Source of the DNA: Zootoca vivipara
Lineage: Eukaryota
Reading direction: 5' to 3'
NCBI RefSeq assembly: GCF_963506605.1
Contig: NC_083280.1
Location: 4,774,001 to 4,838,000, forward strand
DNA length: 64,000 bases
The translations under genes and the position numbers were made by a program. The notes under the pieces are model-generated. The model saw only the letters and a list, made by a program, of their open reading frames with translations, did not search any database and had not been told where the DNA came from. Positions 25,782 to 52,975 of this stretch are shown here, one piece after another. The number at the start of each line of letters is the position of its first letter. Position 1 is the stretch's first letter.

Positions 25782-27166
25782 TACATCAGGATGAGAAGAG
25801 CCTTTGGGAATGCAGAACGTTGGGTAGGCAGAGGCTCATGTGGGGAGGTATTATAACCACACAAGAGAATCCTTATTCTCATCTCTGGAATGTTGGAGGG
25901 GTTGGCTGGTGTTCAAGATTAAACAGGCATATTAAGTCGTTTTAATTTAACTGGGTGTTTTGTTTTCATTATGCATAAGTTTTGCTTTATGCTTAATGGT
26001 TGCCATCCACACTGAGCCCTCTGGAAAAGGGGGATAGGAATTAAATGAAGAGACTCTCTACTTGGGATGCTCTGCTGACTTTTGCTGTCAAAACTTGGGT
26101 CTTCTTCCTGCCATGCAAACCATGTCTTTGCTTTTTTTTGTTCCTGTGATACTAGTTCCAAGACCAGGAAAAACTGGAAGCACTTCAGTTTAACCCACAG
26201 TGCCCTCTTTGGGGAAACAGAGAGGTTAAGAGAGTTTCATTTTATTTTACAAAGTTGATATACCACTTCTAAGCGATTTATGAAATTATAAAATAAAACA
26301 ATCAGTAAAAAATGTTTGGAAACATTTCAACATGTCTGGATAGGTCACAAGTTCACCAACCCAGTTTGAAGGGAGTATATGGGAGTTTATAGCAGGCACA
26401 CATTCAATTTGGAATGTACTAAAAATGATAAGGAGCAAAACAATTTCTTTCTTTCTTTTTAGTATATCAAAACAAATATTGTGGAGCACCTAGTTGGGTA
26501 TGATAAAATGGAACTGTGAGAAGAATCCTGATGGATCAGACCAAAATCCCATTTAGTCCAGCATCCTGTTCTCACAGGGGCCAACCAGAATCCCCGTGGG
26601 AAACTTGGGAGCAGGACGTGTGTGCATATTAATAAAATACAATCATTACAATATATGATATGTATTATTAATATAATTTTATTTAAAATACATGTCCCCC
26701 ACTGCCTCATTCAGTACAACAGATGGCTCACAAAAATGTCTAAAAATGGCAACAAGACACACCCTAGAAAGAGCCCCTCGCCAGTTCGTGTCTCGGATGC
26801 CCCTCACGAAGAGGAAAGCCTTGCAGCGCTTTGAAAAAGCAGCTGTCCCTGGCAGACGACGCCATTCTAGTAGCCCTGATGCCACCCAGCCCCCAAATCC
26901 CCGGGGGAAACTTCCTAGGCCGTGGCGAATTAAGTGCTGTTGAACCCAATTCGGCATATGTGACACGAAGAGTTCTTCGATTCTGAAATCCCCGCATTGA
27001 AAAGGGGGTTGGGCTAGATGACCTTTGGGTGTCCCTTCCAACTTAATAAGTAACCAGCGATCTCTTTCACTTTTCAAATTGCCCACTGGGCGTAACGCCC
27101 ACCCTAAGGAAGCGCTCCGACCCCCGCGACCTCCCCGCTCCGCCTTCCTTCACACGACACACTCAC

Positions 27167-27180
27167 CCGGCGGCCTCCAT
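27167..27180 (-). CDS. IQCG: IQCG coding exon 1 (MEAAG; in-frame upstream ATG at 27204 possible)
   Basis: gccATGG Kozak, ATG GAG GCC GCC GG then GTGAGT; phase 2 matches exon 2; spliced CDS totals 1230 nt (409 aa). Confidence 0.75.
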
Positions 27181-27196
27181 GGCGGGACCCGGAGTG

Positions 27197-27210
27197 GTCG
27201 CCATGGTTAC
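27197..27210. promoter_or_regulatory. RFX X-box-like element at IQCG 5' end
   Basis: GTCGCCATGGTTAC, an imperfect palindrome resembling GTTGCCATGGCAAC; X-boxes are typical of motile cilia genes. Confidence 0.55.
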
Positions 27211-27491
27211 CCCTCAAGCGGCAGGAGAGGTCCTCACCGGGAAGGGCTGACCTAGTTGACGCCTGCCAGGGTGGGGTTTTTTTTAGATTTTGGGCTTGAA
27301 GCGCGGTTCAGGAGCAGAAGAAAAGCTCAGCCCACAAACAAGCGAACAAATCAGTTTTTTTATCCTAGAGACTCGTCAGAAAGCCCGACCTGGAGCGATT
27401 TCAGACAGGCAAGCGGCGTAGACGCCTCAACAGACGCCAGCAAAGGGGTCCTCGCGGTCCCCTATCCCAGCTCGCCCAGCGGCTGCGCTCG

Positions 27492-27528
27492 CTCTTTCTC
27501 GCCGCCATCTTGGCTCGGTGCTGCTGAG
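27492..27528 (+). other. RPL35A: RPL35A non-coding exon 1 with 5'TOP tract
   Basis: CTCTTTCTC polypyrimidine initiator, YY1 site, then GAG|GTAAGA donor. Confidence 0.8.
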
Positions 27529-28666
27529 GTAAGAGCGGGGAAGGGTCTCTGTGGGCGGGCGAGGCGGCGAAGGGCGGCGAAGAAGAGGCTCCAGAGGCGG
27601 GCGGGCAGGCGCTACGAGGGCCGGCGCTCCGGCCTGGGTGGGTGTAGCGGGGTACGGCGGCGGGATGGCTCGGATACGGGATGGATGTTGCCGGGGCCCT
27701 GAGTTCGGGCCTTGGCTGATGCCGCCACAGGGACTCTTAGAAGGCCCCAGCTCTGCCCCTTTAATTGCTTCGGGGGGAGCTTTTTAGTCGGAGGCAAGGG
27801 AGCCCCTGGCAGCCCCAGGCGCCTCGAGTGCGCGTCTCCGGAGGGGAATGGTGAGCTGGAGGTGAACATTAAAGGTGAGCCTTTAAGGTGGACATTAAAA
27901 AGAGCCCTGCAGTGTAGGACCAAACAGCCACCTGGTGCAGCGGGCTTGGTGCCCAGCCACGTACCCCGGAGGGGCGGACACAGGGCAGGGCAGGGAGACC
28001 CTCACAGATTCTCCTTAGCAGCTTTTTCAGGGGGTACACTGTCCCTAATCATGGAGGCTCCATTTCGCTGCCGTGCCTGATAGGCTCATCAGTCGCTATC
28101 TTCTGTTGCTTTTTTGCAATTCCGTTGAGTTGAGTTGTCCTTTTGTGTGTCTTTTAAGAAAAGACTTCCTTTTGTTTTGGCCTCATCAAGGTGGGTTAAG
28201 CTTAAATCTTGCAGGTGCCTAGATCCTCCAGCTATTTTAAGCTTTGTTCAGGGCGGGTGTGGTATTCGAAGCTGAAAGGGGTTTTTGCAGGCCAAGCAGC
28301 CGTAGCCCAGTGATGGAGCACTTGCTTTGGAGGTAGGAAGGAGGAGGCCCTTTGGATTTGATCCACAGCATCACCAGCGAAAAGGATACAGTATTGACTT
28401 GGGAGGGCTAGAATAGAGCCCTGCCTAGGACCTTAGAGAACTGCTGCTGCTGCCGGCTCAAAAGTAGACGATGCTGTAGCTTTTCGAAACACATTGGAAT
28501 TGCCAGTTCACACAAAGTATTCCTGCCACATGTCTGGCAAAGACCTCTCCTCTGCGGATTTGGCACAGTGTGGTGTTAATTTATGGAATTCTTTGCCACG
28601 TGGTCACAGTGGCAGTTAGTTTAGGTGCCTTTAAATTGTAGAGTAGGAAGGGAGAGCCATCTAGCA

Positions 28667-29642: not shown

Positions 29643-29954
<312 letters not shown>

Positions 29955-30944
29955 TGAGTGGTTATTGATAATGGGGACTAGTGCTTTACACTTGGATCTT
30001 TTGTATATTCTCATGAGCAAGCTGAAGAACTGAAACCATTTCGAAATTGTTTTCATTTTATGCCATACTGCACAAATTGGGGCAATGTGGCCTCAGATAC
30101 TGCTGTGTGAATAATTGAGCCAGGAAAGCCAAGACATGGTGTAATGCAAGACGTGGACCAGCTCAGATTCCGGCTCAGCCATAGGCAAATAACTGATTGT
30201 ACTCATGCAGCAGTACTAAAACCATAGTTTAGTGTGACATGAACAAACAGGAATGAGCAGCATCTCAGACTTGGAACTAGAACCCAGCGACATCCATTGA
30301 AACTGATGAGAATTGAGAGAGGCAAAAGAAAGTAGTTCCTCACACACAATATAGAGTTCAATTATGGCATTCACTACCTCAGGATGTAGTGGTGGCCACC
30401 ATATTGGATGGCTCCAAAAGGGGGTTAGGCACTTTAATAGAAGAGTAAAAGGCTATCATGCTTCCGACTATCCCTCACTGGGGAACAATAGCAAGAGAGG
30501 ACTATTTCCCTCATGTCCTGCTGTTGGTCATTGGAGGAAACCGAATGATCCAGCAAGGTGCTTGGTTGGCAGAAGCTGGGACAGCAACGGGCACTCACCC
30601 TGTCGTGTGGATTCAAACTGCCGACCTTCTGGTCAGCAGACCCAAGAGGTTCAGTGGTTTAGACCACAGCGCCACCCATGATAAGAGAAACTTCATGGAA
30701 CAGTTCGTAATTTCAGGAGATCTACCTGCTCACTCATATGTTCATCGCCATCACATCAGGGGATGACTTTACGTGTGAATTAGTCATCACTGAAAGAACT
30801 GAAAATTTCATATTGTCTGATTGTCTATTCTCACTGCTTTTCAGTGGGGTGTGTGTGTATCTATCTACACAGTAACATTTTGGAGAGCACTCCTGCATTT
30901 GGTCAGTAATGGGACTTAATGTTTAATCTGTTTCCCTTTGTCAG

Positions 30945-31089
30945 CAACACCGTGACGCCTGGTGGCAAACCCAACAGGACCAGAGTGATCTGGGGGAAGG
31001 TGACCCGTGCCCATGGAAGCAGCGGCATGGTGCGGGCAAAGTTCCGCTCCAACCTACCTGCCAAAGCCATTGGACACAGAATCCGAGTG
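30945..31089 (+). CDS. RPL35A: RPL35A exon 4
   Basis: [48 protein letters not shown]; 145 nt. Confidence 0.97.
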
Positions 31090-32104
31090 GTGAGCATTGC
31101 GAGTGCCCTTGACAGGCCTGAGGCAGAGAAATTCTTTTCTATAAGCTACCTTGAGGATTTTTTAAAAAAAGAAAAATTCTGAACTAAAATTAATCGTGAG
31201 CAAACTTTTGTGTGTCAGTAGCCTGACAGACACATATATTGTCTTGCTGTTTCCTCTTGGTTGCAGTGAGTGGTGCAGTTGAGTGTGTTGTCTTGTGGAG
31301 AGCTATTGGCTATCTGGCTGCATGCTGCCATTCTACCTGAGGAATCTCATTCACACTCATTTAAACACTGCACACTGATGTGGCACAATGTGTAGCTGAG
31401 TAACCCTGTAGGCCTCTTAACAAGGCTGTCTGTCGGTCAGACCTGCCTCCAGTGGTGGATGCAAGGATCCAGATAGGAAGGGGAAACACTGAAGCTTGAA
31501 CTCAGGGCAGGTTCTCAGAAATACCTGTGAACTGCATATCTAGCAACATAGACAGTTGTTAACAGAAGTTATCGCCTGTTGGTAGGTGGGACTGTGCTTG
31601 TTGACCCTGTGGTACGAGGCGCTCTTGTATGGCAAAATTTTGTTGCCTCTTAGAAATGTAAGCAGATGTGTTGGGGCCAACACTGCTCTGTGTTCTTGTG
31701 CAAATGGGGGAGTTATCACCCAGGGCTTGAAAAAAATTGCAAATTATTGAAACTTTCCAGTGTGTCCACATAATAAATGTAGAGCTTGTAAATGTCTGTC
31801 AAAATTACTGGGAACATTGAATGAAATCAATTGTTTGCCATGCTTTCAGTGGACTCCTTGAAATCAGTGGATTTGAGTATATAAGTTCAGTTGTTTCAGT
31901 GAGTGCTCTGAGTATGACTTGACTTTGATACTGTATCCCCAGTGCAATTCTTTTTTGCACTTCTTGAGGATCCTTCTTGCGTGATTTAAATAACAGAAAA
32001 TATTTTTGGATGTATGTTTTGTTCCCTAGTGAGATCTTCATAGGGCATGATTTCTTTTCCCTTCCAACTGTTTAACTTTCTTCCCCCCCCTTTTTTTTTT
32101 ACAG

Positions 32105-32128: not shown

Positions 32129-32982
32129 ATTTAGAGTGAAAATAAAATTTAAGACTATATTCCACTTTTGTATATTTGGTCTTGCCTTGCCTTTTTGTTT
32201 CCTGTCCTTGAGGCTCAGTTGCAGGAAAACACTGTTCTACAATCAGAAAATTCTTTGTTGTTTTTAAGGCATTGAAGCAACAGATTATTTTTAAAATAAA
32301 GCTGTGGTCCATGTTCCTGGCAGCAACTCATTCCCAACATCTCTGCTCCTCTTTTATAGTAGTGATCTTAGGTTTTCTAAAATGCTGTGACCTTTACTGT
32401 TCAGTTGTTTAGCTCAAGTGGAGCCTGAAACGTGGATTTCTTCACCCAGCCCTCCTCCACATGTAATTGTCAGTTTATATAAAACTGAAGTCATAAATGT
32501 GTTTCCTTGTCCTCATGATATGATTAAACAACAAAGTCCATCTCTTTTAATCTGATTGGGTCCCTGGCCACCCAAGTCTCCTTAGCCTTGCACTGTGCCA
32601 AGAAAAGTATTGCTGGGTCCCAGCTGGGAAGGTTCTCTGTAGCTGCTACTTATCCCACCTACCTCTGCTGCTAGTCTCTTCACCTACCCTCTGAACCTAC
32701 TGAAGCAAGTGGGACTCTGGTTATGATGCTTTAACTGCATATGGGAGGGGTGGGGCATATTGGGCGAATATGTGGCTTTTTACAAAAAAAATTAAGCAGG
32801 CATGATCTCTAGGTTGCAACCTGGTAAACCCTAGTCAAGAATCACAGGTGATGGTGAAATGGAATGAAATCATTGTCATCTTGTGATTAGGGCTATGCTC
32901 TGTCTCCATAGTCTGACAGCAGTAATGTTTCTGAAAAGCACAGTGAGAGAGTGCTCTTGTGCTAGGGTCCTGCTTTTGGGTT

Positions 32983-33551
32983 CAAATGCCAACAGTGCCC
33001 TTCAGCTCTCTATATTGGACAAACAGGTCAAACCCTACCCCAAAGGATAAATGGACATAAATCTGACATCAGGAACCAGAAGACAGAAAAACCAGTAGGA
33101 GAACACTTCAATCTCCCAGGACATTCTATACAAGATCTCAAAGTAGCTGTCTTACTACAAAAGAATTTCAGAAATAGACTGGAAAGAGAAGTTGCTGAAT
33201 TACAACTTATCACCAAGCTCAAAACCATGGAGGGACCTGGTTTGAACAGAGATATCGGATTCTTATCTCATTATACATGATAAGCGATCTTCAGCCATCT
33301 CAACCCTTGCTTTTTCATGCAAAACCATTTGCAGTCGTTTTCGGTCATCAACAGCTATCAGTCAGTCAATCACCCATTTCCACCACCCTTCTGAGTGATC
33401 TCCCCTCCCCATCTCCACCCCCTCCCCACCCCTTCTCTACATAAGTGCCTGGGGACTCCTATTTCACTGTATCTGAAGAAGTGTGCATGCACACGAAAGC
33501 TCATACCAAAATAAAAACTTAGTTGGTCTTTAAGGTGCTACTGAAGGAATT
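32983..33551 (+). mobile_element. 5'-truncated Penelope-like element: GIY-YIG endonuclease C-terminus, 3' region and pLTR with hammerhead (33469-33506)
   Basis: Open frame to TGA 33280: KCQQCPSALYIGQTGQTLPQRINGHKSDIR...EHFNLPGH...GPGLNRDIGFLSHYT*; YIG and GLN motifs. Confidence 0.88.
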
Positions 33552-34137
33552 CTTCCAACTCTGATTCATTAGTAGCCCATATTTTGCAACACATTTGGGA
33601 ACCAAGGACAGCTGCCTGTATTTCAAAGCTCAGTCAGATGGGCTCGCAGTGGGGACTGCAGCTGCAGCAGAGAAAATTGTTGCAGTGTGTTCGGTCCAGG
33701 TACAGTGCACAGTCCATCTTTACAGTGAGCCAAAACGGGTTTGACTGCAGGTGCAACAGAAATCTGCCAAAGAAATCTCATTTTTGGAATAAGAGAGTGC
33801 ACTCTTCATTTGGCTATGTCACCAGCAGAGGGCGCTGCTTCAGCTTCCTTCCATTTCTTGGCTGCCAGTTAACATTTCACAGATCTCGGCATCAACCTTT
33901 AACTCTCAGCCCATTTTCATATTTTTATTTCGAATATTATTTTGGCACTGGGAGTTAAAAGCTGCTGCCATAAACTGACTCAAGCTATTTGTTCACCTAG
34001 CTCATTCCCCATTGAATGGCAGCGGCACTAAGGATTTCAGGCATTGACCATTCCTAACCACTTTCCAAAGCCAGCTCCACATGTGGCTCGTTGGCATTAA
34101 TCTAACGAGCATTATCAAGGCTTGGATAACTTGTTCA

Positions 34138-34250: not shown

Positions 34251-34574
34251 GCCCAAGGTAACCTTTTGAGTTTCATGGCTCAGCAGGGATTTGAATCCTG
34301 GCCTCCAACATTCTAATGGTTACAGGACACTGTGACACAGGATTCTTTAATTGCCTGTAGGGTGGTTTTTAAACGGCTAAAAAGTTGCAGTCTTTTATCC
34401 TGTGAATCTAATGCTGTCGAAACTTTATTCTGAATACATAAATAGTACTGCGGTTCAACTGTAAAGTACTGTGCAGGCTACTTAGAAGTAAGTCTCATTA
34501 AAGCCTAAATCATATTTTTCACACAAAATCCGATCTGAATTAGGAAGAGCATCAATGCTCCTCTTTTCTTGTCC

Positions 34575-34927
34575 AGTCACAGCTCCCGCCCCCAAATCAT
34601 ACATTTCTTCAATTTTTTTCTATGGTCCCTTAATGGCGGCGCGGGAGCAAGCAGAGTAAAACGAAACCAGGAACCGAACCTCCACACATCTGAATTGTGG
34701 CTCTACATTTTTATCTCAGGGGTGCAAATGAATGAGAACGCCTCCTTTGAACTTATACCCGGTAGCCTCTGCGTTCGGAACGAGCTAATAGGCTAAAAAC
34801 TTTGTGCAGCATTTGCATTCCGCTCAGTGATAGGCTGGGAAGGTTAAGGGAGTAGACGCTACGGCAAGCCGCGTAGTTTCGAAATCTCACTGCCAGTCAT
34901 TTCTGTGTTTGTTTCTGCTGCGGAAGT
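34575..34927 (+). promoter_or_regulatory. CpG-enriched promoter of the ERCC6L-like gene
   Basis: Local CpG enrichment; YY1/E2F-like ATGGCGGCGCGGGA near 34633, CHR-variant TTCGAA 34878-34883, ETS CGGAAGT 34921-34927. Confidence 0.6.
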
Positions 34928-34980
34928 ATGGCTGAGTCGTTGGGCACTGATAATCCTGAGCGGGATGACCAGTACCGGAG
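34928..34980 (+). CDS. ERCC6L: ERCC6L/PICH-like coding exon 1
   Basis: MAESLGTDNPERDDQYR(R) then GTAAAG donor, phase 2; aligns with recalled human exon 1 end SPEQAAHYLR. Confidence 0.85.
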
Positions 34981-35690
34981 GTAAAGCGAAAAGGATTTGG
35001 AACGGGAGGGTGATTCTGCATTTAAGGTTTACTTCTGAGCTAAGATTTCAGAGCGTTTCTCTTTCCCCGGATAAGAAATGGGATAACGCCGTTTCTCCTG
35101 CGCAAATGGGAGTCAAGACTGTACAATCCTAGTACCTGCCCGGGGGACTCAGTTGGTTTTACTGCTGTGTACACCTGTGTATGGTAACGTTGTGGAGCTG
35201 TGATATTCGAAATATTTAATAAAAGTTATTTGAATAATTACTAGCTCACATTTCAGGGTGCACTAGTTCCCTTGGCAGGTTGCAGCAGATCTAAAAATTG
35301 CAATGTTAAATTTCCAGGATGTAAAACAGCAGCAAAAGCAATTAATAGCGTTAAAATAACAGCAGGCCAGAAAGTTATTCAAAATAACAATAGTAAAATA
35401 TAGGTAGCCCTGTTGGCTTCTTTTTATCTGGGAGAGTGGGAGGGGGGACCTAGTACAGAATAGCTTTATTTTCACCACTCAGAATTTCCTAAAATATAGC
35501 ATACAAGCTTTCAGAGTTCTTCGTGCTGGATGTTAAAGGGTGTGTTAGCCAAACAAGTAGCAGAAGAGTAAAAGGTGGACTACAACTGTAAGTGAAATTG
35601 ATTAAGAACTGCATAAAAAGTTGGACTTTGGGACAAATTATATACCTAATCTCCCCCCCCCTTTTTTTTTGTTGAGTTACTGTATTTTGT

Positions 35691-35823
35691 GTGGTATCTG
35701 AAGAAGTGTGCATGCACACGAAAGCTCATACCAAAATAAAAACTTAGTTGGTCTTTAAGGTGCTACTGAAGGAATTTTTTTATTTTACTTCGACCCAGAC
35801 CAACACGGCTACCTACCTGTAAC
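35691..35823 (+). mobile_element. Penelope-like pLTR fragment with hammerhead (35692-35733) in ERCC6L intron
   Basis: Near-identical to 5075-5206. Confidence 0.82.
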
Positions 35824-36414
35824 CATGAAAGACGGTGTTTGCTGCCCCTAGTGGCGGGATATGTATATTGCCTAGTTTGAATATTGAAAGGTAACACTAA
35901 AGAGAGTGAAGGAGTGGGAAGGGAGGGGAAACTACAGTTCTCAGGACTCCCTGGGGGAAGCCATGTGCTTTAAATATGTGGTGTGCCTCTGCCCTAACAC
36001 TACAGTGTCCACTCAGAAGTACCGTGTATATATATCAGTGAATTCAATTGTATGTACTTACTCTCATAGGACTGCAGCCTTAATCAGGTTAGGTTCTGCT
36101 AGGTGTAAAAAAATATTTCAAGATGCACGGAAAGCTGCTGAGGCAAAGAAGCAACATTCCTCTATATTTTGAAAATAAAAAAATCTACCAAGTATTTGCT
36201 AAATCTCCAGCTTTGCAAATATAAGGGTTACTGTGTTGGTGTTTTTACTTCTGCTCACTTTAAGTTCCTGATTGTTCCTTTGCATTGTTCCCCACAACCT
36301 TGTGTTCAGATTAAGGTCCATACTGGGCCTAACTGGAACCAGAGGTTGGGCCAGAGGTTTCCCATTGGTGATAAAAGCTCAATGGCATGGTTAATCCTGT
36401 GATTTTGCCTTTGT

Positions 36415-36418
<4 letters not shown>

Positions 36419-36495
<77 letters not shown>
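36419..36495. repeat. (AG)n microsatellite, about 38 units
   Basis: Direct reading. Confidence 0.97.
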
Positions 36496-36498
<3 letters not shown>

Positions 36499-36509
36499 CT
36501 GGTGGTGTC

Positions 36510-36820
36510 ACAGACCTTATCTGTTCTATAGATTTAAGCACTATCATACCAGCTTAAACAGCCATGGCTTCCCCTAAAGACTCCTGAGAGTGCTGAGAGT
36601 CTCCTGATTCACTTCACAGAGTTGTTAGTTAGAAGACCCCTATTTTCCTCATAGAGCTACATGGGTTCCCTGGGAAGAGGGATTGCCATGAGGAAAATAG
36701 GGATCTTCTAACAACTCTCAACACCCTTAACAAACTACAGTTCCCAGGATTCTTTAGGGGAAGCCATGAGTATTTAAAGTGGTTTGTTAGAGCTTTAAAT
36801 GCATAGTGCAGGTGGGGTCT
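36510..36820. mobile_element. Degenerate palindromic MITE-like repeat
   Basis: Imperfect fold-back (CATGGCTTCCCCTAAAGA / TCTTTAGGGGAAGCCATG); related copy at about 62715-63020. Confidence 0.6.
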
Positions 36821-37766
36821 TGTGGGACTCCACTGACACTACCCAAAATGCTGTGTCCTTGGGCAGATGAGGCCTAATTCTCTCTGGAGAAACTTACCAA
36901 AACTCCACTTCTAATTTTTCCAATGCAATCCTATTTAGTCTACTCAAAAGCAAGTCCCATTGAGTTGAAGTGATCTTTGGGTGTTAGCCAGAATAATGCA
37001 GTTGGAAACAGTGTCTGGGCAGAAATCGCAGAAATGTCCAGGAAAATCCAGACGTTTGGCAATCTATGTCAGAAGTCTAGATTTTGGTGAATTTCCTTAA
37101 AAATAGCTCAAAAACTGCAATATTTTTGTTGTTGAGATTTTACAAAACAAGCTCAACAACTTTGACAAAAGAAAAAGCTCAACAACTTTTGTGTCCAGAT
37201 TTTCACGTTTTGAAATATGGCAACCCTAGTGTTGAACATTTTTTATTCCACAAAGGTTTTTAATAATTTAAATTTATTTCTTTAGAAACTGCTTAATCAA
37301 ACAAATCTTTAAGCAGTGTGCATAAAACAAGTATAAGTAATACACAAATGAATTCAGCAAATATTTTTAGACTGATATGTGTCTGGACAGGATTTTTGAA
37401 TTAAAAAGGTTTTAGCAGATGTCTAATATCAGATAGCAAGGCTGTCTGCCTAGCACTGATTGGGAAGGAAAGCATATATGCTGCCACACTGAAAGATAAA
37501 CTCCTAGCAAATGCAGAATGAACATTATATGGCCCTTATAGAAGTGCAAGTTCTGCAGATCAAAGTGCTTGAGGTAGAACACATGGAGCAAGTGCCGGTA
37601 AATGCTACAAGTAAGCCGGTCCCAAATTTTTATATAATTTCTAATGCTGTGTGTGAGTGGTCTCTGAATTTTTAGAGCTATTGTGTTTATCTCTTTTTGA
37701 TATTTGATTTATTTTTACTATTAATTTTGTCATTTTTGTAACTCACTATATACTCGCTTTATATAT

Positions 37767-37801
<35 letters not shown>

Positions 37802-37935
37802 AACAATAAATGACAGCTGTTTTGTAGGCATGTTATATTGTGTGAATCAAATGCATGGATGCTACTGTCCTTACTGAGACTCTTGAGTTGATTTTTGCAG
37901 GGTATTTCTGACTCTTCAAACTTTATATTTTGCAG

Positions 37936-40900
37936 ATTTGTCTCCCAAGCAAAGCAGGAAGCAAAAAATGGCAATCTGGAGGAATCTCTCTGCCTTCTGA
38001 GGCAGGCACACCAAATCAATCCCTGTGAAAAGCTGACAAGAAAAATGAAAAAAGTTGAGGAAGCATTAGCTTCATTAGCCCTGGATCAGGAAGATGATGT
38101 CTTTGTGGACGTTTGTCAGAGTGGACTAATGTTGTTTGGTGAAATACATGACAAGCTATTTGACCACCAGAGAGAAGGGGTTGCCTTCTTATACAGTTTA
38201 TACCGCGATGGAAGGAAAGGCGGTATCCTTGCAGATGACATGGGTTTGGGGAAAACCATTCAGGTCATTGCTTTCCTCTCAGGCATGTTTGATGAAGAAC
38301 TCATTCGGACTGTGCTGTTAATTATGCCACCTAGCCTTTTGAGCAACTGGCTTGAAGAGTTTGCCAAGTGGGCTCCTGGGCTGCGAGTGAGTGTCTTTCA
38401 TGGGCCCAAGAAGCATGAATGTGAGAAAAATCTAAAGAGGATCCAGAAGAGGAGTGGTGTCTTGCTCACGACTTATCAGCTGGTCCACAGCAATTGGCAG
38501 CAGTTATCAAGCTTTGATGGGAAGGAGTTCGTCTGGGACTATGTAATCCTTGATGAAGCTCATAAAATTAAAACACCATCTGCCAAAACGACAAAATCTG
38601 TGCATGCTATCTCTTCTGAAAACCGCATCCTGCTCACAGGGACCCCAGTCCAAAACAACCTAAAAGAACTCTGGGCTCTTTTTGACTTTGCTTGTCAGGG
38701 AACGCTTCTAGGCACGATGAAAACCTTCGGGGCAGAATATGAAAAGCCTATCACAAGAGCCAGGACAAAGAATGCAACCGAGGAAGAAAAAGCACTGGGA
38801 CTGAAGATGTCTGAAAACCTGATGTCCATCATCAAGCCGTATTTCCTAAGACGGAGTAAGGATGAACTACAGAACAAAGTTAAGCCTGAACTTAAAACCA
38901 GTCTCCCAGAATATCAGAGCAAGGCTGTTGCTTCTGAAATGCCGTCACTGCCCAGAAAGAATGATTTCATTGTGTGGGTATACTTATCACCCATACAAAA
39001 AGAAATATATAGGGACTTTCTGTCTTTGGATCATATCCAAAAGTTGTTAATGACCACAAGGTCCCCACTAGCTGAACTGACTGTCTTGAAGAAACTCTGT
39101 GATCACCCTAGGCTGTTGTCAGCACAAGCATGTAGCAAACTTGGTCTGGAAGCTCTCAATTATAATATGGTGGATGGTGATGGAAATGATGGGCTTTCCA
39201 GCATGAAGAGAAACCTTGGGCACATTTTGGATGAGACTCTGATGGCGGAATCAGGAAAGCTGTGCTTCCTCGTGGCCCTGCTGGAAAGATTGCAGGAGGA
39301 AGGGCACAGAACACTGGTGTTCTCTTATTCAAGAAAAATGCTGGATATTATAGAGCGCATCTTAACTCACAGGTGCTTTAAGATAATGCGCATTGATGGA
39401 ACAGTAAGCCATTTGGAGGAGCGAAAAAGGAGAATTAGTGTCTTTCAGAAGAGCAAAGAATACTCTGTGTTTCTGCTTACTACCCAAGTCGGTGGGGTTG
39501 GTCTAACCTTAACAGCAGCTACCAGGGTGGTGATTTTTGATCCTAGCTGGAATCCAGCTACAGATGCTCAAGCCGTAGACAGGGTTTACAGGATAGGGCA
39601 GAAGGACAATGTTGTAATCTACCGGCTAATTAGCTGTGGGACAGTGGAGGAAAAAATCTACAGAAGGCAAGTATTCAAAGACTCATTAATCCGGCAAAGC
39701 ATGGGAGATAGGAAAGACCCATACAGATATTTCACTATGCAAGAACTAAGGGAGTTGTTCACACTGGGAGATACTGAGAGCTCAGAAACTCAGCTCCAGC
39801 TTCAATCTTTGCATGCAAGCCAAAGAAAAACAGATAATCAGCTGGACCAGCACATTGCATATCTCCATTCACTAGAGATATTTGGCATATCAGACCATGA
39901 CTTAATGTACACACACGAAGCAGTTCGTGGAGATGAAGTTGAGGATGAAGAAGTCCACAGGGACATTGAACGCAGGGTACAGAAAGCTCAAGAGCTGGTA
40001 CAGCTGGAATCCCAACTAAACACAACTGAAGGGGCATCACTTAAAGAAATGGAATTGTCTACCCAGCCAAAGAAAAAGCCATCAAAGCCTTTTCCGAATT
40101 ATGCTCTTGTCCCACCTGTAACTGATGAACCTACAAACAGTGAGAACATCAGTCTTGTAGGCGACAGTGATGATGACATTGTCAGTGTGAGTTCTAAGAT
40201 GACAGAGCTATTTATTGAGGAGGATGAACAAGTGCTTCAGAACATAACTAATATGGATATCTCTGCATCCATGGACAGAAAATGCAGACCAGCAAGTCAA
40301 CAAGAAGTAACTCCTATATCTTCTTTTACTCAAGCTCATTCATTATCTTACAAGGAGAACTGTAGCCCTGCATGTCAGGTGGTTTCCCATGACCCACCTG
40401 CTGAGGGAAATGGCAAGTTTAACGATGCCCAAGTGGCCCCACTGCAGCAGTCATTTCACTATGTGCCTGATGATGGTGATGATCATCTACAAACTACTCA
40501 AAAGCATTATCAAAGTCCTGTATCCTCCTTTTCTCAAGGTCACTTGTCTTGCCAGGTAAACTGCAGTTCTGAACTTCAAACAGTCTGCCACGACCCACCT
40601 GTTGAGGCAAATGGCATGCTTATTGATGTCCAAGGGGTCCCATTGCAGCAGTCATCAGAGTATGTGTCTAACCCTGTCAATGAACAAGGCGAAACTGACA
40701 TGTCTCTCAATGTTCCTACAAGTCCACATGGAGAGGCAGGTGAAGTTGCTGAGCCAGGTGCCTCAGGAGCACCTCAACTGCAGACCAGTAAAATGTCAGA
40801 CCTCAGTTTTACGCAGAAATCTGGAATGAGTGTAATAATGACGAATGAGGTTCTATCTGATTCTCCCCAATGTGATTTCAGACTTGTCTTAGACGATTCC

Positions 40901-41473
40901 GAGGATCAGTTGCAAGATATCTCAGGAGTGGAAATGTCATTGAAGGATACAAAGAGCACCAGATTTCAACTGAATAGCCACTGCAGCTCTTGGGCTCACT
41001 CTCAGCTTCAGGAAAATTGGGACAACAGAAGTTTCCAAGCCAGCAAAAGTATAATGGGGTCTATGGTTATTGATGACTCTGATGATGTGTTGATGAACAA
41101 CAGTGAGCTTTCTTATCAGCATAAAAATATGCCCGTTAAAATAATCATTTCAGATAGTGAAGAGGATGACAGTTGTTTTACAATTGCTTGGGATGATACT
41201 GGTGGTAAGCACAGACAAGGATCTCCCACAAACAAACAACCTGATATTATGTCAACACCAAAATCTAAATTGTCCACAACTAGCCTTTGTTTCTCTCCTA
41301 GGATAATAGTTAGTGGAAGAAGATCAACCGCTTCTCGAAAATCCCTTACTAGTATCCTATTGGATCAGGTGGAGGACATTGCAGAGACCATTGAATCCAC
41401 CAGTTATATGCCTTGTGAAGATTCTTTTAAGCTTTACCTTGAAGCAGAAAAAACTCTGGACAATTGTGATTAG
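37936..41473 (+). CDS. ERCC6L: ERCC6L/PICH-like SNF2-family DNA translocase, giant exon 2 (whole protein 1196 aa)
   Basis: tttgcag acceptor at 37935; N-terminal TPR, Walker A ILADDMGLGKT, DEAH box, TGTPVQNNL, QAVDRVYRIGQ, PICH-family segment ISDHDLMY, STP motif; AATAAA at 41793-41798. Orthologue versus paralogue is unresolved. Confidence 0.93.
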
Positions 41474-43320
41474 GAGTTGGAGTGGCTGGAAAAGGAGCCG
41501 TCCAGTGAAATGATAGAGTCTGAGAGCAAAGTTAGAATTTTGCTAAAGCAATTTCTAGAGTTCTTATACTGTTACACTCACCCCTTTTATGGTACCCTTT
41601 TATTGATTCCTTCCAGAGCAGATTTGCATCCAATCACAGCAGTGGAAAGATGAACCTGCACCTTGAGAGAAATTGCTTCTGACATTGATCTGTAACATTT
41701 AAGGCCCAGCTTCTTTCACTTGGGGTGTGTGTATGCCCCCCCTCTCTTTATTTTTTATTTTTTTTTGTAAGAACTGGCTGTTAAGAATTTAAAATAAACC
41801 TGGTTTAACTTTGCAATCCTATTGTGTTAGCTGCTCTCTTTCTTTCTCTCTTTTACCACATTTTAGTTAATGCCATCTATTTCCTTGTTCCCACAGAAGG
41901 CAAGGAGTCCTTTCTTTCCAAGTAGATATAGGGATCCTGTGCTCCCCAAGACGTTGCTGGATCACAGCTCATAGTCCCTGGCATCACTTGGGCATACTGG
42001 TTGGGGCTGATGAGAGGGTTAAAAGTTCCTGCCTCTGCTTCAGAGGCTTAGTTCTCACCAAAATGTCCAAGCCTATATTTGGACTGTTCCTATGTCCACA
42101 GTTGGAGGATCACCAAACCAAATGCTCCTCATACTAAAAGTTCCCTGAAGAAAGTAAACTGGTGTGATAAAGGGGAAAGGTAAACTAGAGCTCGGCTGCA
42201 TTACATCTAGCAGATAAATAAGTGGGAAGGGCAGCAAACAGATTCTTGCATGGCTTTGGAGTTCAGGTAGAATAGAGCCTGATGTTTTTAATGAATGAAT
42301 GGGCCCACTAGCTAAGCTTGCTTCTTTTTTAGCTGTCCTGAAGCAGGAGGTAACCAAATGGTCACTAGTGATTGGTTCTGTTAGGAATCCCTTAAATCAC
42401 AGGTGTATAAAATTAAAATGAGATACTGTATTAATGAAATCAACATTCTCTTAATCTAAGCTTGGTACAGGCAAGATTGGTACTATTAAATGTTCCCCAT
42501 TAACTGTTGGACATTCTCAAAAAAGATTTCGGAGATTATTCTGATTCTTCTAACCAGGTTTACACAAAATAAATACAGTCTGGTGTCAAAGTTATTTTCT
42601 CCTAAGTACTATATATACTTTAAAAAGTTTTCGTTTAAAATTTGTTCTCCCCTACCCCATCCTAGGTTGCAATCTAGCAGTGCCATTGACATTAAGTGCC
42701 ATTGACATTAAGAAAGGGAAGGGAGACCAGAAATCGGATTGTGTGCTGTGTCTCTAAACATATAATGAAAATAATAATACTCAAGAAATAAGTATACTTG
42801 AGTGTCTCTTTACATTATCTTTTTGTTCATATAAAATCTCATTTTCCTATTCTTTCACAGCTCTTGTTTGATGCAAGATCTTTCCGTTATTATACACTTC
42901 TGTTAAAAGTCAGCTAAACCCTCAAAATGTTGTGAATATGTATTCATTTCCTGTTGAGAAAGACTGGTGGAATAGTTTGTGGCACCTAGGTGCTTGCAAT
43001 CTTACCTGGTGAAAAACGTTTTGCCGCAGAAAACCTATATAATATTGTGTTCCTGTCTATCTTGTCCAATATAAGCCCACTGGATGTGTCTGGGCTCCAG
43101 CTCTCATCATCCCTGACCTTGGCCTTGATGCCTAGAGTTTATGGGAATTGGAGTTTATAACAACATCTGGAGGACCAAAGGTTTCCTGCTTTAAATAGAG
43201 ATTCATCAGCATTTACGTACTTGTTGAGAATCTTTTAACATTTTATCCCATTTTTTCCTACCATAAGAGACCCCTATAGGTTGATGTCCCAAAGGACATG
43301 CATTTATTTGACATACTGTA

Positions 43321-52019: not shown

Positions 52020-52870
52020 CGGTCGCAGCTTTCTCTTTCTCCTCCTCCGAGAGGCGGTTCCGGCGGCCGCTCCAGGCGACCCTTCCCGGCCGGGGGCTGA
52101 GCTTGCGGGCGGCGCCTCCGTCCAGCCGGTCCTCCTCGTCCTCGGGGAGGGAGGAGGAGTCCTCGGCCGGCGAGGAGGCGCGCTTGGCCGGCCTCTCTCT
52201 CCATGGATCCTCCGCTGCTGCTGCATCTGCGCGAGTTCCAGGCGCTGGTGGATCGCGCGGGCGGCCGGGGGCGGCTGCTGCTGGTGGGCGAGGCGCGCGA
52301 GGGCGACCCGGCGCCGCGGGCGCTGCTGGAGACCTTCGCCCGGGACCTCTTCGCCGAGCCGGAGCCGCGCAAGGAGCAGGAGGCGGAGGCGGCGGCGAGG
52401 GCGCAGCCGGATCCAGATCCTCCCGGAGGGGCGCGCAGGGTCCGCGTGCGCGTCGGCGGCAGAGGCTCGGCGGCGCGCTCGTGCCCGCCGTGCGCGCTGC
52501 TCTTCGTGCTCTTCCGCGAGGCATCGCTCGCGCCTTTGCCGCCGCCGCACGCGCGCCGGGAGCGGCTCCGCCTGCGCGAGATCCTCTGCGACGTGCGCAG
52601 CCAGCTGCCCTCGGCGGCGCTCCCGGGCGTGGTGGGCGTGGTGGTGCTGGGGAGCGGGGGGCCCCCCGGCGAAGGTGAGGGCGCCCGGCTGCAGCTCGAC
52701 GCGCTGCTCCGGCAAGTCTTCCGACGGAGGCGCCCGGCAGAGCACGACACCCTGCAAGCCGCCCCCTACAGCCCCGGAGCCGGTCAGGGGGCTGCCGAAG
52801 CCCGCGCCGCCGCCTGCCGGGCGCTGAGAGCCGCCCTGAAGCTCCGAGCAGGTGAGCGCAAGGGGGGGGG
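52020..52870. promoter_or_regulatory. CpG island over C2orf72 promoter and exon 1
   Basis: Very high GC and CpG content. Confidence 0.8.
52203..52851 (+). CDS. C2orf72: C2orf72 homologue exon 1
   Basis: FQALVDRAGGRGRLLLVGE...LREILCDVR...LLRQVF...QAAPYSPG...AAACRAL matches recalled human C2orf72; G|GTGAGC donor, phase 1. Confidence 0.88.
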
Positions 52871-52975
52871 AAGGGCAGGCATTATTTTGCATTTATATCC
52901 AGCTCTCTTTTGCACAGGTAGCTCCACCACGGTGGACGTGCCGGATTTGCCTATAAGCTAAACAAGCTATAGCTT

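What the first reader, a model, noticed from the sequence alone, without database searches (positions are those of the whole stretch)
34575..41800. Intron-retaining ERCC6L/PICH gene in a non-canonical locus: candidate lineage-specific paralogue, possibly an autosomal copy of a Z-linked gene
Seen: a complete two-exon PICH-like gene with a CpG promoter, an intact 3.5-kb exon and a polyA signal, lying between RPL35A and C2orf72. Exon 1 (34928-34980) is missed by the ORF track and splices at the same phase-2 Arg codon as human ERCC6L, so this is not a processed retrocopy. Established: mammalian ERCC6L is on Xq13 beside PIN4 and RPS4X, a block homologous to chicken 4p, and the lacertid Z is homologous to chicken 4p; no PIN4 or RPS4X sequence is visible here. 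Inference: a DNA-mediated duplication or relocation. If a copy remains at the ancestral locus, this is a second, diverging PICH that could buffer dosage in ZW females or be germline-specialised.
Basis: partly seen in the sequence, partly recalled or inferred. Interest (0 to 1): 0.78.

Follow-up and report, generated by a model that had tools for sequence, protein, structure and literature searches.

The report
Autosomal copy of Z-linked PICH helicase
The common lizard carries a second, intact and transcribed copy of the cell-division helicase gene ERCC6L (PICH), copied with its intron and promoter from the Z sex chromosome onto an ordinary chromosome and now changing faster than its parent.

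Summary
At 34928-41473 (+) lies an intact two-exon ERCC6L/PICH gene. It has a CpG-retaining promoter and an AATAAA signal, and it sits between RPL35A and a C2orf72 homologue. It equals the Zootoca vivipara RefSeq protein XP_060130275.1 (1196 aa).

- **A second copy exists.** The same annotation holds another long ERCC6L (XP_034989710.2, 95-96% identical) on a 48.7-Mb chromosome.
- **That copy sits where other lacertids keep theirs.** Podarcis and Lacerta have their long copy on 47-51-Mb chromosomes, and one paper places ERCC6L on the Lacerta Z.
- **The window's chromosome is an autosome.** At 98.2 Mb it matches the 96-102-Mb chromosome that carries C2orf72 in Lacerta and Podarcis.
- **The duplication is Zootoca-specific.** The two Zootoca copies are sisters (support 100/100), and an older duplication is rejected (AU p=8e-7).
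- **It was DNA-mediated.** Intron and exon 1 are retained, the promoter stays CpG-rich, and there is no poly(A) tail.
- **The copy is fast but constrained.** It has 26 derived residues against 10 in the other copy (p=0.011). Only 1 of 22 falls in a conserved column (P=4e-5).
- **It appears transcribed.** An exon-only contig from a likely RNA run carries its diagnostic states.

Not shown: breakpoints, the exon 1-exon 2 junction in reads, sex linkage in Zootoca itself, and any dosage or germline role. The scan had not noted this gene elsewhere.

The parts
34600..34927 (+). Promoter and 5' leader region that retains its CpGs. It holds a CHR-like TTCGAA at 34878. The transcription start was not mapped.
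   Evidence: CpG observed/expected is 0.99 at 34600-34799, 0.91 at 34800-34999 and 0.92 over 34600-35130, against 0.34 for the whole window. Sequence read.
34928..34980 (+). Coding part of exon 1: 17 codons plus 2 bases of the Arg18 codon, followed by a GT donor.
   Evidence: Sequence. The same peptide opens RefSeq protein P0001. It is conserved, with one change each, in P0002 and in Podarcis raffonei P0004.
34981..37935 (+). The single intron, 2955 bases, carrying high-copy transposon pieces.
   Evidence: GT at 34981 and AG at 37934-37935. Contigs of DNA run X3 cross the acceptor without a break (record 14, 37808-38745). Read pile-ups occur only at 35620-36019 and 36620-37419. The repeat at 35694-35779 is 99% identical to 33469-33554.
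37936..41473 (+). Exon 2 coding part, residues 18-1196 plus the TAG stop. It encodes the SNF2 ATPase and Helicase_C domains and a long variable tail.
   Evidence: ORF. Pfam SNF2-rel_dom E 2.3e-66 and Helicase_C E 1.6e-22. 100% identical to P0001. An exon-only contig of run X13 starts exactly at 37936.
40018..40019 (+). Junction of a 27-base in-frame deletion specific to this copy. It removes nine residues that the other Zootoca copy, Podarcis and Lacerta keep, and that Rhineura keeps as a similar stretch.
   Evidence: Protein alignment. Codon arithmetic as. The X13 contig aligns across the junction to 40031 with no further mismatch.
40343..40686 (+). Internal tandem repeat in the variable C-terminal region: two units 201 bases apart, 71% alike.
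   Evidence: the repeat finder family D1. The other Zootoca copy lacks 14 residues in this region.
41474..41815 (+). 3' untranslated region with AATAAA at 41793-41798. There is no poly(A) tract in the DNA.
29802..31089 (+). Upstream neighbour RPL35A. Two coding exons were seen, and its GC-rich promoter lies near 27000-28000.
   Evidence: Pfam Ribosomal_L35Ae matches in frames 29643-29954 and 30910-31179. GC is 0.62 at 27001-28000.
52203..52958 (+). Downstream neighbour: first coding exon of the C2orf72 homologue. The 3' limit of the exon was not mapped.
   Evidence: Pfam DUF4630. 100% identity over 86% of the query to the RefSeq C2orf72 homolog of Zootoca, on the same 98,226,198-bp chromosome.
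32966..33554 (+). Transposon remnant about 1 kb upstream of the promoter: a GIY-YIG-like frame followed by an 86-base terminal repeat.
Evidence: Weak GIY-YIG match, 20.7 bits, below the 22.6 cut-off. Repeat D2.

Best explanation
This is a young, Zootoca-specific copy of the long ERCC6L/PICH gene. The parent lies on the ancestral lacertid Z chromosome.

A DNA segment of at least 6.5 kb was copied into an autosome, between RPL35A and C2orf72. It held exon 1, the intron, exon 2 and very probably the promoter. Both copies stayed intact.

The autosomal copy keeps all helicase domains and has an unmethylated-looking promoter. It is transcribed in at least one sample. It is still under purifying selection but accumulates amino-acid changes about 2.5 times faster than the Z copy, mostly in the variable tail, and has an in-frame 9-residue deletion.

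- **Shown:** the gene structure, the second copy on another chromosome, the sister relationship, the rate asymmetry, and the avoidance of conserved sites.
- **Inferred:** the direction Z to autosome, Z linkage in Zootoca, an age of very roughly 10 million years, and that it works as a second PICH helicase equally dosed in both sexes.
For: **Structure.**

**Identity and copies.** P0001 is 100% identical and lies on the 98.2-Mb chromosome. P0002 is 95% identical and lies on the 48.7-Mb chromosome. Both UniParc identifiers fall in one number range, so I infer both proteins come from one annotation batch.

**Parent locus.** Long copies in Podarcis and Lacerta lie on 47-51-Mb chromosomes. ERCC6L is stated to be on the Lacerta Z. 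The lacertid Z, Zootoca included, equals chicken 4p plus 17. The Z of a Darevskia assembly scaffolded on L. agilis is 45.3 Mb. In the male Zootoca assembly Z2 is 50.1 Mb.

**Autosomal host.** C2orf72 orthologues lie on 95.9-101.8-Mb chromosomes in three other lacertids. The male assembly has a 97.35-Mb chromosome 5, while its Z1 is 75.7 Mb and its Z2 50.1 Mb.

**Age.** P0001 and P0002 are sisters, with SH-aLRT 100 on 30 rows and ultrafast bootstrap 100 / SH-aLRT 100 on 14 rows. The AU test rejects P0002 grouping with the other lacertids, with p=7.9e-7.

**DNA-mediated origin.** The intron and the exon-1 peptide are present in both copies. There is no poly(A) tract.

**Selection.**
- There are 26 derived residues in this copy, 10 in the other and 7 unpolarised, out of 43 differing aligned positions. 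The binomial p is 0.011.
- Only 1 of 22 scorable derived residues lies in a column at least 90% conserved, although 493 of 1094 columns are that conserved (P=3.6e-5).

**Presence in other animals.** The stretch is held at 0.71-0.93 of sampled words in runs of three studies. X3 DNA contigs match with 0-3 differences each.

**Transcription.** A 2096-base contig of X13 covers exactly 37936-40031, with zero depth on unique intron and promoter bins. It carries 5 of the 6 residues in that range that are derived in this copy, plus its deletion junction.
Against: - Breakpoints, flank homology and dN/dS are therefore missing.
- **Other copy not seen in DNA run X3.** At the two shown positions where the copies differ (38876 and 39326), no letters of the other copy appear, and depth over the gene is no higher than in the promoter. 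Contigs drop minor paths and I laid no outside control region, so this is inconclusive. It does not confirm two copies in that animal.
- **Little expression in raw RNA.** Two raw-read RNA runs, each about 6% sampled, gave essentially no depth on either exon: about 1.5x in three bins of X21 and none in X22. No exon 1-exon 2 joint was listed.
- **X13 is only guessed to be RNA.** Its contig is not identical to the window. It has 12 differences, one of which is the residue of the other copy at 332, and it lacks this copy's residue at 482. A mosaic of both copies cannot be fully excluded.
- **Gene conversion.** It could make an older duplication look young.
- **Z linkage.** For the 48.7-Mb Zootoca chromosome it rests on size and orthology. 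Chromosome 14 of the male assembly, at 46.75 Mb, is nearly as close in size as Z2.
Confidence: 0.78

Rival explanations
1. The window copy is the W-linked (or neo-W-linked) partner of the Z-linked ERCC6L, so the two proteins are gametologues rather than an autosomal and Z paralogue pair.
For: British Zootoca have a Z1Z2W system in which the W is fused to an autosome, and the 2020 reference animal was a female. About 5% protein divergence would suit gametologues. The sex of the animal behind the RefSeq assembly is not known to me.
Against: - The neighbour C2orf72 lies on a chromosome of the same size class (95.9-101.8 Mb) in three lacertids with simple ZW systems.
- The male Zootoca assembly has a 97.35-Mb autosome 5, while its Z1 and Z2 are 75.7 and 50.1 Mb. 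A fused autosome would have a free partner of one of those two sizes.
- Lacertid Z/W differentiation is shared by the family, yet the two copies split after Zootoca left Lacerta and Podarcis.
- The best DNA holder (X1, 0.93 of words) is the only 2025 run of study P1. [quoted passage not shown] This step is inference from coded ids.
Confidence: 0.05
2. The duplication is old and shared by lacertids. It looks young because gene conversion homogenised the two Zootoca copies, and the autosomal copy was lost or left unannotated in Podarcis and Lacerta.
For: - ERCC6L duplicates repeatedly in squamates. Lacerta agilis has two differing models on one chromosome. Hemicordylus and Thamnophis each have two on one chromosome, and Pituophis has three.
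- The X13 contig mixes states of both copies at residues 332 and 482, which could reflect conversion.
- Only annotated proteins were searched.
Against: Among the 120 best hits and the cluster members read, no long ERCC6L protein lies on the 96-102-Mb chromosomes of L. agilis, P. muralis or P. lilfordi. Differences between the copies are spread along the whole protein, with 6+2 in residues 1-700 and 20+8 beyond, rather than confined to unconverted blocks.
Confidence: 0.08
3. The copy is a young duplicate on its way to becoming a pseudogene: still open only because it is young, with no function of its own.
For: It evolves 2.6 times faster than the other copy (26 against 10 derived residues) and has lost nine residues that the other lacertid long copies keep (Rhineura has a similar stretch). 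Depth in two raw RNA runs is near zero. Lacerta ERCC6L is reported with omega above 1, so the family tolerates change.
Against: - The 1196-codon frame is open and the helicase domains are complete.
- Derived residues avoid conserved columns: 1 of 22 against 45% expected, P=3.6e-5.
- The promoter keeps CpG observed/expected at 0.92.
- The exon-only X13 contig is of the window type.
- The X13 haplotype, 0.57% diverged, is also open over its 2096 bases. All 12 differences are substitutions (6 synonymous, 6 not), and none creates a stop.
Confidence: 0.08
4. Assembly artefact: a divergent haplotype or misplaced contig makes one locus appear twice.
For: In X3 I saw only window-type contigs over the gene and no excess depth. 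Another window of this assembly was flagged by the scan for a possibly artefactual identical 38-kb repeat (note s1-851704, unchecked).
Against: - The two proteins differ at 43 aligned positions and by three indels. That is far above the 0.46% heterozygosity reported for the species.
- The window has no N between RPL35A, the gene and C2orf72.
- The two models lie on chromosomes of very different size.
Confidence: 0.03

Closest known systems
ERCC6L / PICH (Plk1-interacting checkpoint helicase), an SNF2-family DNA translocase of the ERCC6 subfamily
   Same: It has the SNF2-related and Helicase_C domains. The closest solved relatives are ERCC6/Rad26 (E about 1e-96). Every one of the 120 best database hits that carries a name is called ERCC-6-like or ERC6L, apart from a few 'hypothetical', 'uncharacterized' or 'unnamed' records. 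It nests inside the squamate ERCC6L clade. It has two exons, the first very small.
   Different: It is a second long copy in one species and lies on an autosome. It lacks nine residues after the helicase region. Like all lacertid long copies, it ends before the C-terminal stretch that Rhineura still has. No TPR family passed in the Pfam scan of this protein.
Gene traffic off sex chromosomes (out-of-X retrogenes of mammals and Drosophila; out-of-Z movement discussed for ZW animals)
   Same: A sex-chromosome gene has gained an autosomal copy that is equally dosed in both sexes. The parent is reported as fast-evolving and linked to reproductive function in Lacerta.
   Different: The classic cases are intronless RNA-mediated retrocopies (recalled). 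This copy keeps its intron and very probably its promoter, so it arose at the DNA level. One gene says nothing about a genome-wide bias. The review and papers were seen only as a search listing.
Transposon-associated gene traffic between autosomes and the W chromosome in Varanus acanthurus (bioRxiv 10.1101/2025.04.01.646716; abstract read)
   Same: It is DNA-level movement of genes between a lizard sex chromosome and autosomes. Here too the insertion site is rich in transposon remnants.
   Different: The direction there is autosome to W, involving many genes and specific retrotransposon families. Here it is one gene, Z to autosome, and no transposon could be tied to the breakpoints because these were not found.
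The old short ERCC6L paralogue of lacertids and Rhineura (about 700-730 aa; P0109, P0111, P0121-P0124)
   Same: It is another retained ERCC6L duplicate in the same genome, with the N-terminal region and helicase domains.
   Different: It is much older: a separate clade with a stem of 0.31 that includes Rhineura. It lacks the whole C-terminal half and lies on a third chromosome of 72.1 Mb. It is 71% identical to the window protein.

Membership tests
ERCC6L / PICH (SNF2 family) | SNF2-related ATPase lobe followed by the Helicase_C lobe | tested here: met
   Pfam SNF2-rel_dom E 2.3e-66 (residues 77-393 of exon 2) and Helicase_C E 1.6e-22 (residues 444-554).
ERCC6L / PICH (SNF2 family) | Orthology-level placement among ERCC6L proteins rather than ERCC6, ERCC6L2 or other SNF2 subfamilies | tested here: met
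   The best 120 hits are sauropsid ERCC-6-like proteins at 49-100% identity. It sits inside the lacertid ERCC6L clade with 100/100 support. ERCC6L2 was not included as an explicit outgroup.
ERCC6L / PICH (SNF2 family) | N-terminal and C-terminal TPR motifs and the PICH family domain (features recalled, not taken from a call) | tested here: inconclusive
   No TPR family reached E 0.01 in the Pfam scan of this protein, although some bird orthologues carry precomputed TPR hits. The N-terminal and post-helicase regions align well with orthologues. The extreme C-terminus is cut by a stop shared by all lacertid long copies.
ERCC6L / PICH (SNF2 family) | Binding of ultrafine anaphase bridges and Plk1 partnership | not testable with these tools
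   This needs cell biology.
Interchromosomal DNA-mediated duplicate of a sex-linked gene | A parent copy persists on the sex chromosome | tested here: inconclusive
   A second intact long copy exists on a 48.7-Mb chromosome. Orthologues lie on 47-51-Mb chromosomes, and ERCC6L is stated to be Z-linked in Lacerta. That this Zootoca chromosome is the Z is inferred, not shown.
Interchromosomal DNA-mediated duplicate of a sex-linked gene | The daughter copy lies on an autosome | tested here: met
   It is gap-free with RPL35A and C2orf72. C2orf72 lies on 95.9-101.8-Mb chromosomes in three other lacertids. Z1 and Z2 of the male Zootoca assembly are 75.7 and 50.1 Mb.
Interchromosomal DNA-mediated duplicate of a sex-linked gene | Introns and regulatory DNA are copied along with the gene | tested here: met
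   There is a 2955-base intron with GT..AG ends. The exon-1 peptide is shared with P0002. DNA contigs cross the acceptor. Homology of the promoter to the parent's promoter was not testable.
Interchromosomal DNA-mediated duplicate of a sex-linked gene | Defined breakpoints, and an empty site in relatives | not testable with these tools
Processed retrocopy | Intronless, with a poly(A) tract after the 3' end and no parental promoter | tested here: not met
   The intron is present. There is no A-run of 8 or more within 1.1 kb after the stop. A CpG-retaining region lies upstream of exon 1.

The most novel reading that the evidence does not exclude
The autosomal copy may be taking over from the Z-linked parent as the lizard's main PICH gene, so that this is a gene caught midway in moving off the Z. 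The driver would be halved dose, or silencing, of the Z copy in ZW females.

It would also be one episode in a wider pattern of restless ERCC6L evolution in squamates. That pattern includes an old short paralogue, independent extra copies in Lacerta agilis, Hemicordylus, Thamnophis and Pituophis, and a reported omega above 1 in Lacerta. It may reflect conflict at meiosis or chromosome segregation.

The only transcript-like contig I obtained was of the autosomal type, with none of the Z type.
Probability: 0.17. Interest if true: 0.65.

Novelty: new member of a known kind. Interest (0 to 1): 0.45.

Why it matters
PICH resolves DNA threads between separating chromosomes, and most vertebrates examined have a single long copy on the block that became the mammalian X and the lacertid Z.

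Female lacertids carry one Z, so a Z-specific gene is at half dose in females. A young, intact, equally dosed autosomal copy is therefore a natural experiment on how ZW animals cope with that.

Movement off the Z is far less documented than movement off the X. DNA-level cases that carry their own promoter are the ones that could work at once.

The pair also gives sex-chromosome workers a simple marker. Copy-specific bases should read 1:1 in males and 2:1 in females.

On its own this is one automatically annotated gene. It gains weight only if expression and sex-specific dose behave as predicted, or if it proves part of a broader pattern.

Tried and rejected
- **Neighbour look-up.** As a substitute I compared the lengths of the chromosomes that carry each protein with a published chromosome table.
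- **Junction and copy-specific expression from raw RNA reads.** Runs X21 and X22 piled only on intron repeats and gave about 0-1.5x on the exons, so there is no junction evidence.
- **Second copy as paralogous variants in DNA contigs of X3.** None was seen at the shown positions. I treat this as inconclusive because contigs drop minor paths and I had laid no control region outside the gene.
- **X13 contig as the Z copy.** Rejected. Only 2 of its 12 differences match P0002 states, it keeps five residues derived in the window copy, and it carries the deletion junction.
- **dN/dS.** Not computed, because I had no coding DNA of the other copy.
- **Target-site duplications or flanking repeats around the gene.** I found only a high-copy 86-base element (one copy upstream, one in the intron) and internal repeats, nothing that marks breakpoints.
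- **Retrocopy.** Rejected.
- **W linkage.** Judged unlikely.
- **'Premature stop' as decay of this copy (note s1-849430).** Rejected. The same end is shared by both Zootoca copies, Podarcis and Lacerta.
- **Scan notes on a second ERCC6L locus or its expected Z neighbours.** None found.
- **Papers.** Searches for ERCC6L with 'lacertid' and with 'lizard' and 'duplicat' each returned one paper, which does not describe this duplication. 'rZooViv1.1' returned none.
- **Supplements.** They were closed and I did not ask for them. The Z-gene lists in the supplements of PMC6534595 and PMC8382678, and the scaffold tables of PMC7643610, may bear on Z linkage of ERCC6L.

Full report
**What is there.** The + strand holds one long open frame, 37895-41473. 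Upstream, an ATG at 34928 opens 53 coding bases that end at 34980 before a GT. A pyrimidine tract ending in AG at 37934-37935 makes 37936 the first base of exon 2. The stop is at 41471-41473, and the only AATAAA or ATTAAA within 830 bases lies at 41793. No A-run follows it. The 530 bases around exon 1 keep their CpGs: observed/expected is 0.92 against 0.34 for the window, at an ordinary GC of 0.47. So 'CpG promoter' is right in the sense of CpG retention, not of GC richness. I searched exon 2 alone and did not join the exons myself. Exon 2 carries the SNF2-related and Helicase_C domains. Its closest solved relatives are ERCC6/Rad26.

**Identity.** The word-based protein search scored 8000 candidates, found 5912 at E of 1e-20 or better, and listed the best 120. 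It returned a 100% match, P0001, named 'DNA excision repair protein ERCC-6-like [Zootoca vivipara]', 1196 aa. Its accession is XP_060130275.1 and it lies on a chromosome of 98,226,198 bp. The organism is therefore the common lizard, and the gene is already annotated automatically.

**Neighbours.** Two RPL35A exons, at about 29802-29954 and 30967-31089, match Pfam Ribosomal_L35Ae. The GC-rich exon at 52203-52958 matches DUF4630 and is the RefSeq 'C2orf72 homolog' of Zootoca on the same 98.2-Mb chromosome. The window contains no N, so all three genes lie in one gap-free stretch. Between them I scanned 10 of the longer frames outside the gene and its intron. I found only a weak GIY-YIG match and a reverse-transcriptase match, which are transposon remnants. 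An 86-base element occurs both at 33469-33554 and in the intron at 35694-35779, 99% alike. It belongs to a very high-copy family, as the read pile-ups show.

**It is not the only ERCC6L.** The same search returned P0002, also Zootoca vivipara: 1191 aa, 95% identical, XP_034989710.2, on a chromosome of 48,720,798 bp. It also returned P0109, 720 aa, 71% identical, on a 72,123,690-bp chromosome. The three UniParc identifiers fall in one number range. I take this, as an inference, to mean that they come from one annotation batch. Other lacertids have their long copy on chromosomes of 47.44 Mb (Lacerta agilis, two differing models), 51.02 Mb (Podarcis muralis) and 51.49 Mb (P. raffonei). Their short paralogue lies on chromosomes of 70.7-79.3 Mb.

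**Which chromosome is which.**
- A paper on green lizards lists ERCC6L among three Z-chromosome genes with omega above 1 (PMC8382678, passages read).
- The lacertid Z, tested in 45 species including Zootoca, shares gene content with chicken 4p and 17 and with human X and 9 (PMC6534595, passages read).
- A Darevskia assembly scaffolded on the L. agilis Z has a Z of 45.3 Mb (PMC13700897, passages read).
- The genome note for a male Zootoca lists Z1 75.68 Mb, Z2 50.12 Mb, chromosome 5 97.35 Mb, chromosome 9 71.77 Mb and chromosome 14 46.75 Mb (PMC13560796, sections 4 and 14 read). That is a different assembly from the one RefSeq annotated, so sizes match only roughly.
- Bird orthologues sit on records of about 20-29 Mb, or 82-86 Mb in quails. 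By my recollection of bird karyotypes, this fits chromosome 4A and the fused chromosome 4.

Together these make the 48.7-Mb chromosome the ancestral Z. I mark this as inference: chromosome 14 of the male assembly is almost as close in size.

**The window's chromosome is an autosome.** C2orf72 orthologues lie on chromosomes of 95,883,647 bp (L. agilis), 101,770,169 bp (P. muralis) and 98,317,578 bp (P. lilfordi). So the window's 98.2-Mb chromosome is a conserved lacertid chromosome of that size class. This matters because British Zootoca have a W fused to an autosome, and I had to consider that the window might lie on that W. The free partners of the W are 75.7 and 50.1 Mb, not about 97 Mb, so the window's chromosome is not the fused one.

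**Age and direction.** In a tree of 30 proteins that I picked from the 130 then held, the two long Zootoca copies are sisters (SH-aLRT 100) inside the lacertids. The rows were long copies from lacertids, other squamates, tuatara, a turtle, a crocodile and two birds, plus five short paralogues. The short paralogues form a separate old clade that includes Rhineura. A more careful tree of 14 rows gives 100/100 for the Zootoca pair. The AU test rejects grouping P0002 with the other lacertids to the exclusion of the window copy (log-likelihood 55 lower, p=7.9e-7). The long copy sits on the 47-51-Mb chromosome in all four lacertid species. No long copy appeared on the 96-102-Mb chromosomes of the others among the hits and cluster members read. 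The Z locus is therefore the parent and the window the daughter. On the slower copy's branch (0.011 of 0.045 since the lacertid node) and a Lacerta-Podarcis split of 33.5 ± 18.9 Ma, the duplication is very roughly 8 million years old. Uncertainty is wide, and the estimate is blind to gene conversion.

**Mechanism of copying.** The copy keeps the 2955-base intron. Its exon-1 peptide differs from the parent's at one residue. It has a CpG-retaining region upstream of exon 1 and no poly(A) tract. It is therefore a DNA-level interchromosomal duplication of at least 6.5 kb, not a retrocopy. I could not find breakpoints, because no DNA of the parent locus was available and no flanking repeat marks them.

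**State of the copy.**
- I aligned both copies with two Podarcis proteins, two Lacerta proteins and one Rhineura protein. The copies differ at 43 aligned positions: 26 are derived in the window copy, 10 in the other and 7 cannot be polarised. The binomial p is 0.011.
- Six of the window's changes and two of the other's fall in residues 1-700. The rest lie in the variable tail.
- The window copy has lost nine residues just after the helicase region that Podarcis, Lacerta and the other Zootoca copy keep; Rhineura has a similar stretch there. The other copy has lost 14 residues in the repeat region.
- I then aligned both copies with 110 non-lacertid proteins of at least 1000 aa. These came from the 120 listed. 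I dropped the lacertid rows, the two short paralogues and shorter models.
- In that alignment 493 of 1094 well-filled columns are at least 90% conserved. Only 1 of 22 scorable window-derived changes hits such a column, and that one column already differs in lacertids (P=3.6e-5). The other copy scores 0 of 9.

The copy is thus accelerated but clearly still filtered by selection. It is a family-wide feature, not decay of this copy.

**Reads.** The stretch 34575-41800 is held at 0.71-0.93 of sampled words by runs of three studies of the same organism. Three small runs guessed to be RNA hold it at 0.35-0.40. I laid 34420-40419 on four runs at 90% likeness.
- **DNA contigs of X3 (a 2020 study).** They cover the whole stretch with 0-3 differences per contig and cross the intron-exon boundary. 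The window-type gene with its intron therefore exists in an independent data set.
- **A result that does not help my reading.** At the two shown positions where the copies differ, X3 shows only window-type letters, and depth over the gene is like that over the promoter. Contigs drop minor paths and I had no outside control, so this neither shows nor excludes the second copy in that animal.
- **Raw RNA runs X21 and X22 (about 6% read).** They gave no depth on exon 1 and at most about 1.5x in three exon-2 bins of X21. No exon 1-exon 2 joint was listed. The junction is thus not confirmed by reads, and the gene is at best weakly expressed in those samples.
- **Run X13.** It gave a 2096-base contig covering exactly 37936-40031, with zero depth on the unique intron and promoter bins. 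That is what spliced RNA would give, and it places an exon boundary at the predicted acceptor.
- **What the X13 contig is.** Its 12 differences are 6 synonymous and 6 not. Only two coincide with states of the other copy (residues 332 and 482). It keeps the window-derived residues at 176, 202, 300, 682 and 697 and reads through the window-specific deletion junction. I read it as a transcript of the autosomal copy from a somewhat diverged animal. The caveats are that X13 is only guessed to be RNA and that a mosaic contig is not excluded.

**Comparison with what is known.** As a protein it is a member of ERCC6L/PICH. As an event it belongs to the known class of sex-chromosome-to-autosome duplicates. 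It differs from the classic out-of-X retrogenes in being DNA-mediated. It differs from the varanid case (abstract read) in direction and scale. Searches for ERCC6L with 'lacertid' and with 'lizard' and 'duplicat' each found only the green-lizard paper, which does not describe a duplication. The scan's own notes hold nothing on a second ERCC6L locus.

**Verdict.** This is a lineage-specific, intron-retaining, autosomal duplicate of a gene whose parent sits on the lacertid Z. It is a new member of a known kind and of moderate interest. The functional proposals (dosage buffering, germline specialisation, or takeover from the Z copy) remain open. They can be tested directly with sexed DNA and copy-specific RNA counts.

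Noticed in passing
window 41471-41653: The TAG that ends the protein is shared by both Zootoca long copies, Podarcis and Lacerta, while Rhineura reads 36 residues further. All lacertid long ERCC6L proteins therefore lack the extreme C-terminus. This is a family-wide truncation, not decay of this copy.
   Followed up: partly
P0109, P0111, P0121-P0124 (not in the window): There is an old short ERCC6L paralogue of about 700-730 aa. It has the N-terminal region and helicase domains but no C-terminal half. It is conserved in Zootoca, Podarcis, Lacerta and the amphisbaenian Rhineura on a third chromosome, and forms its own clade with a long stem (0.31).
   Followed up: partly
P0007 and P0128 (Lacerta agilis); P0031 and P0116 (Hemicordylus); P0032 and P0043 (Thamnophis); P0030, P0033 and P0050 (Pituophis): Several other squamates have two or three differing ERCC6L models on one chromosome. 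In the 30-row tree the Lacerta, Hemicordylus and Thamnophis pairs are each other's sisters, which suggests repeated independent duplication of this gene. I did not check whether some of them are isoforms or assembly duplicates.
   Followed up: partly
window 33469-33554 and 35694-35779: Two 99% identical copies of an 86-base element occur, one upstream of the gene and one in its intron. RNA and DNA reads pile on it by the thousand, so the family is very abundant and transcribed.
   Followed up: partly
window 34746-34883: The promoter has CHR-like hexamers at 34746 and 34878 but no exact CCAAT box within 34500-34930. Two similar 8-base words lie 41 bases apart at about 34791 and 34832. Whether this differs from the parent's promoter could not be checked.
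   Followed up: no
window 40343-40686: The variable tail holds a two-unit tandem repeat of about 67 residues (71% alike at DNA level). Length changes between the two copies and between species cluster there.
   Followed up: no
window 35081-35133: In DNA run X3 two contig forms coexist here (depth 41 and 29), differing at four positions within 53 bases of the intron. They are either two alleles or the two gene copies. I could not tell which.
   Followed up: no
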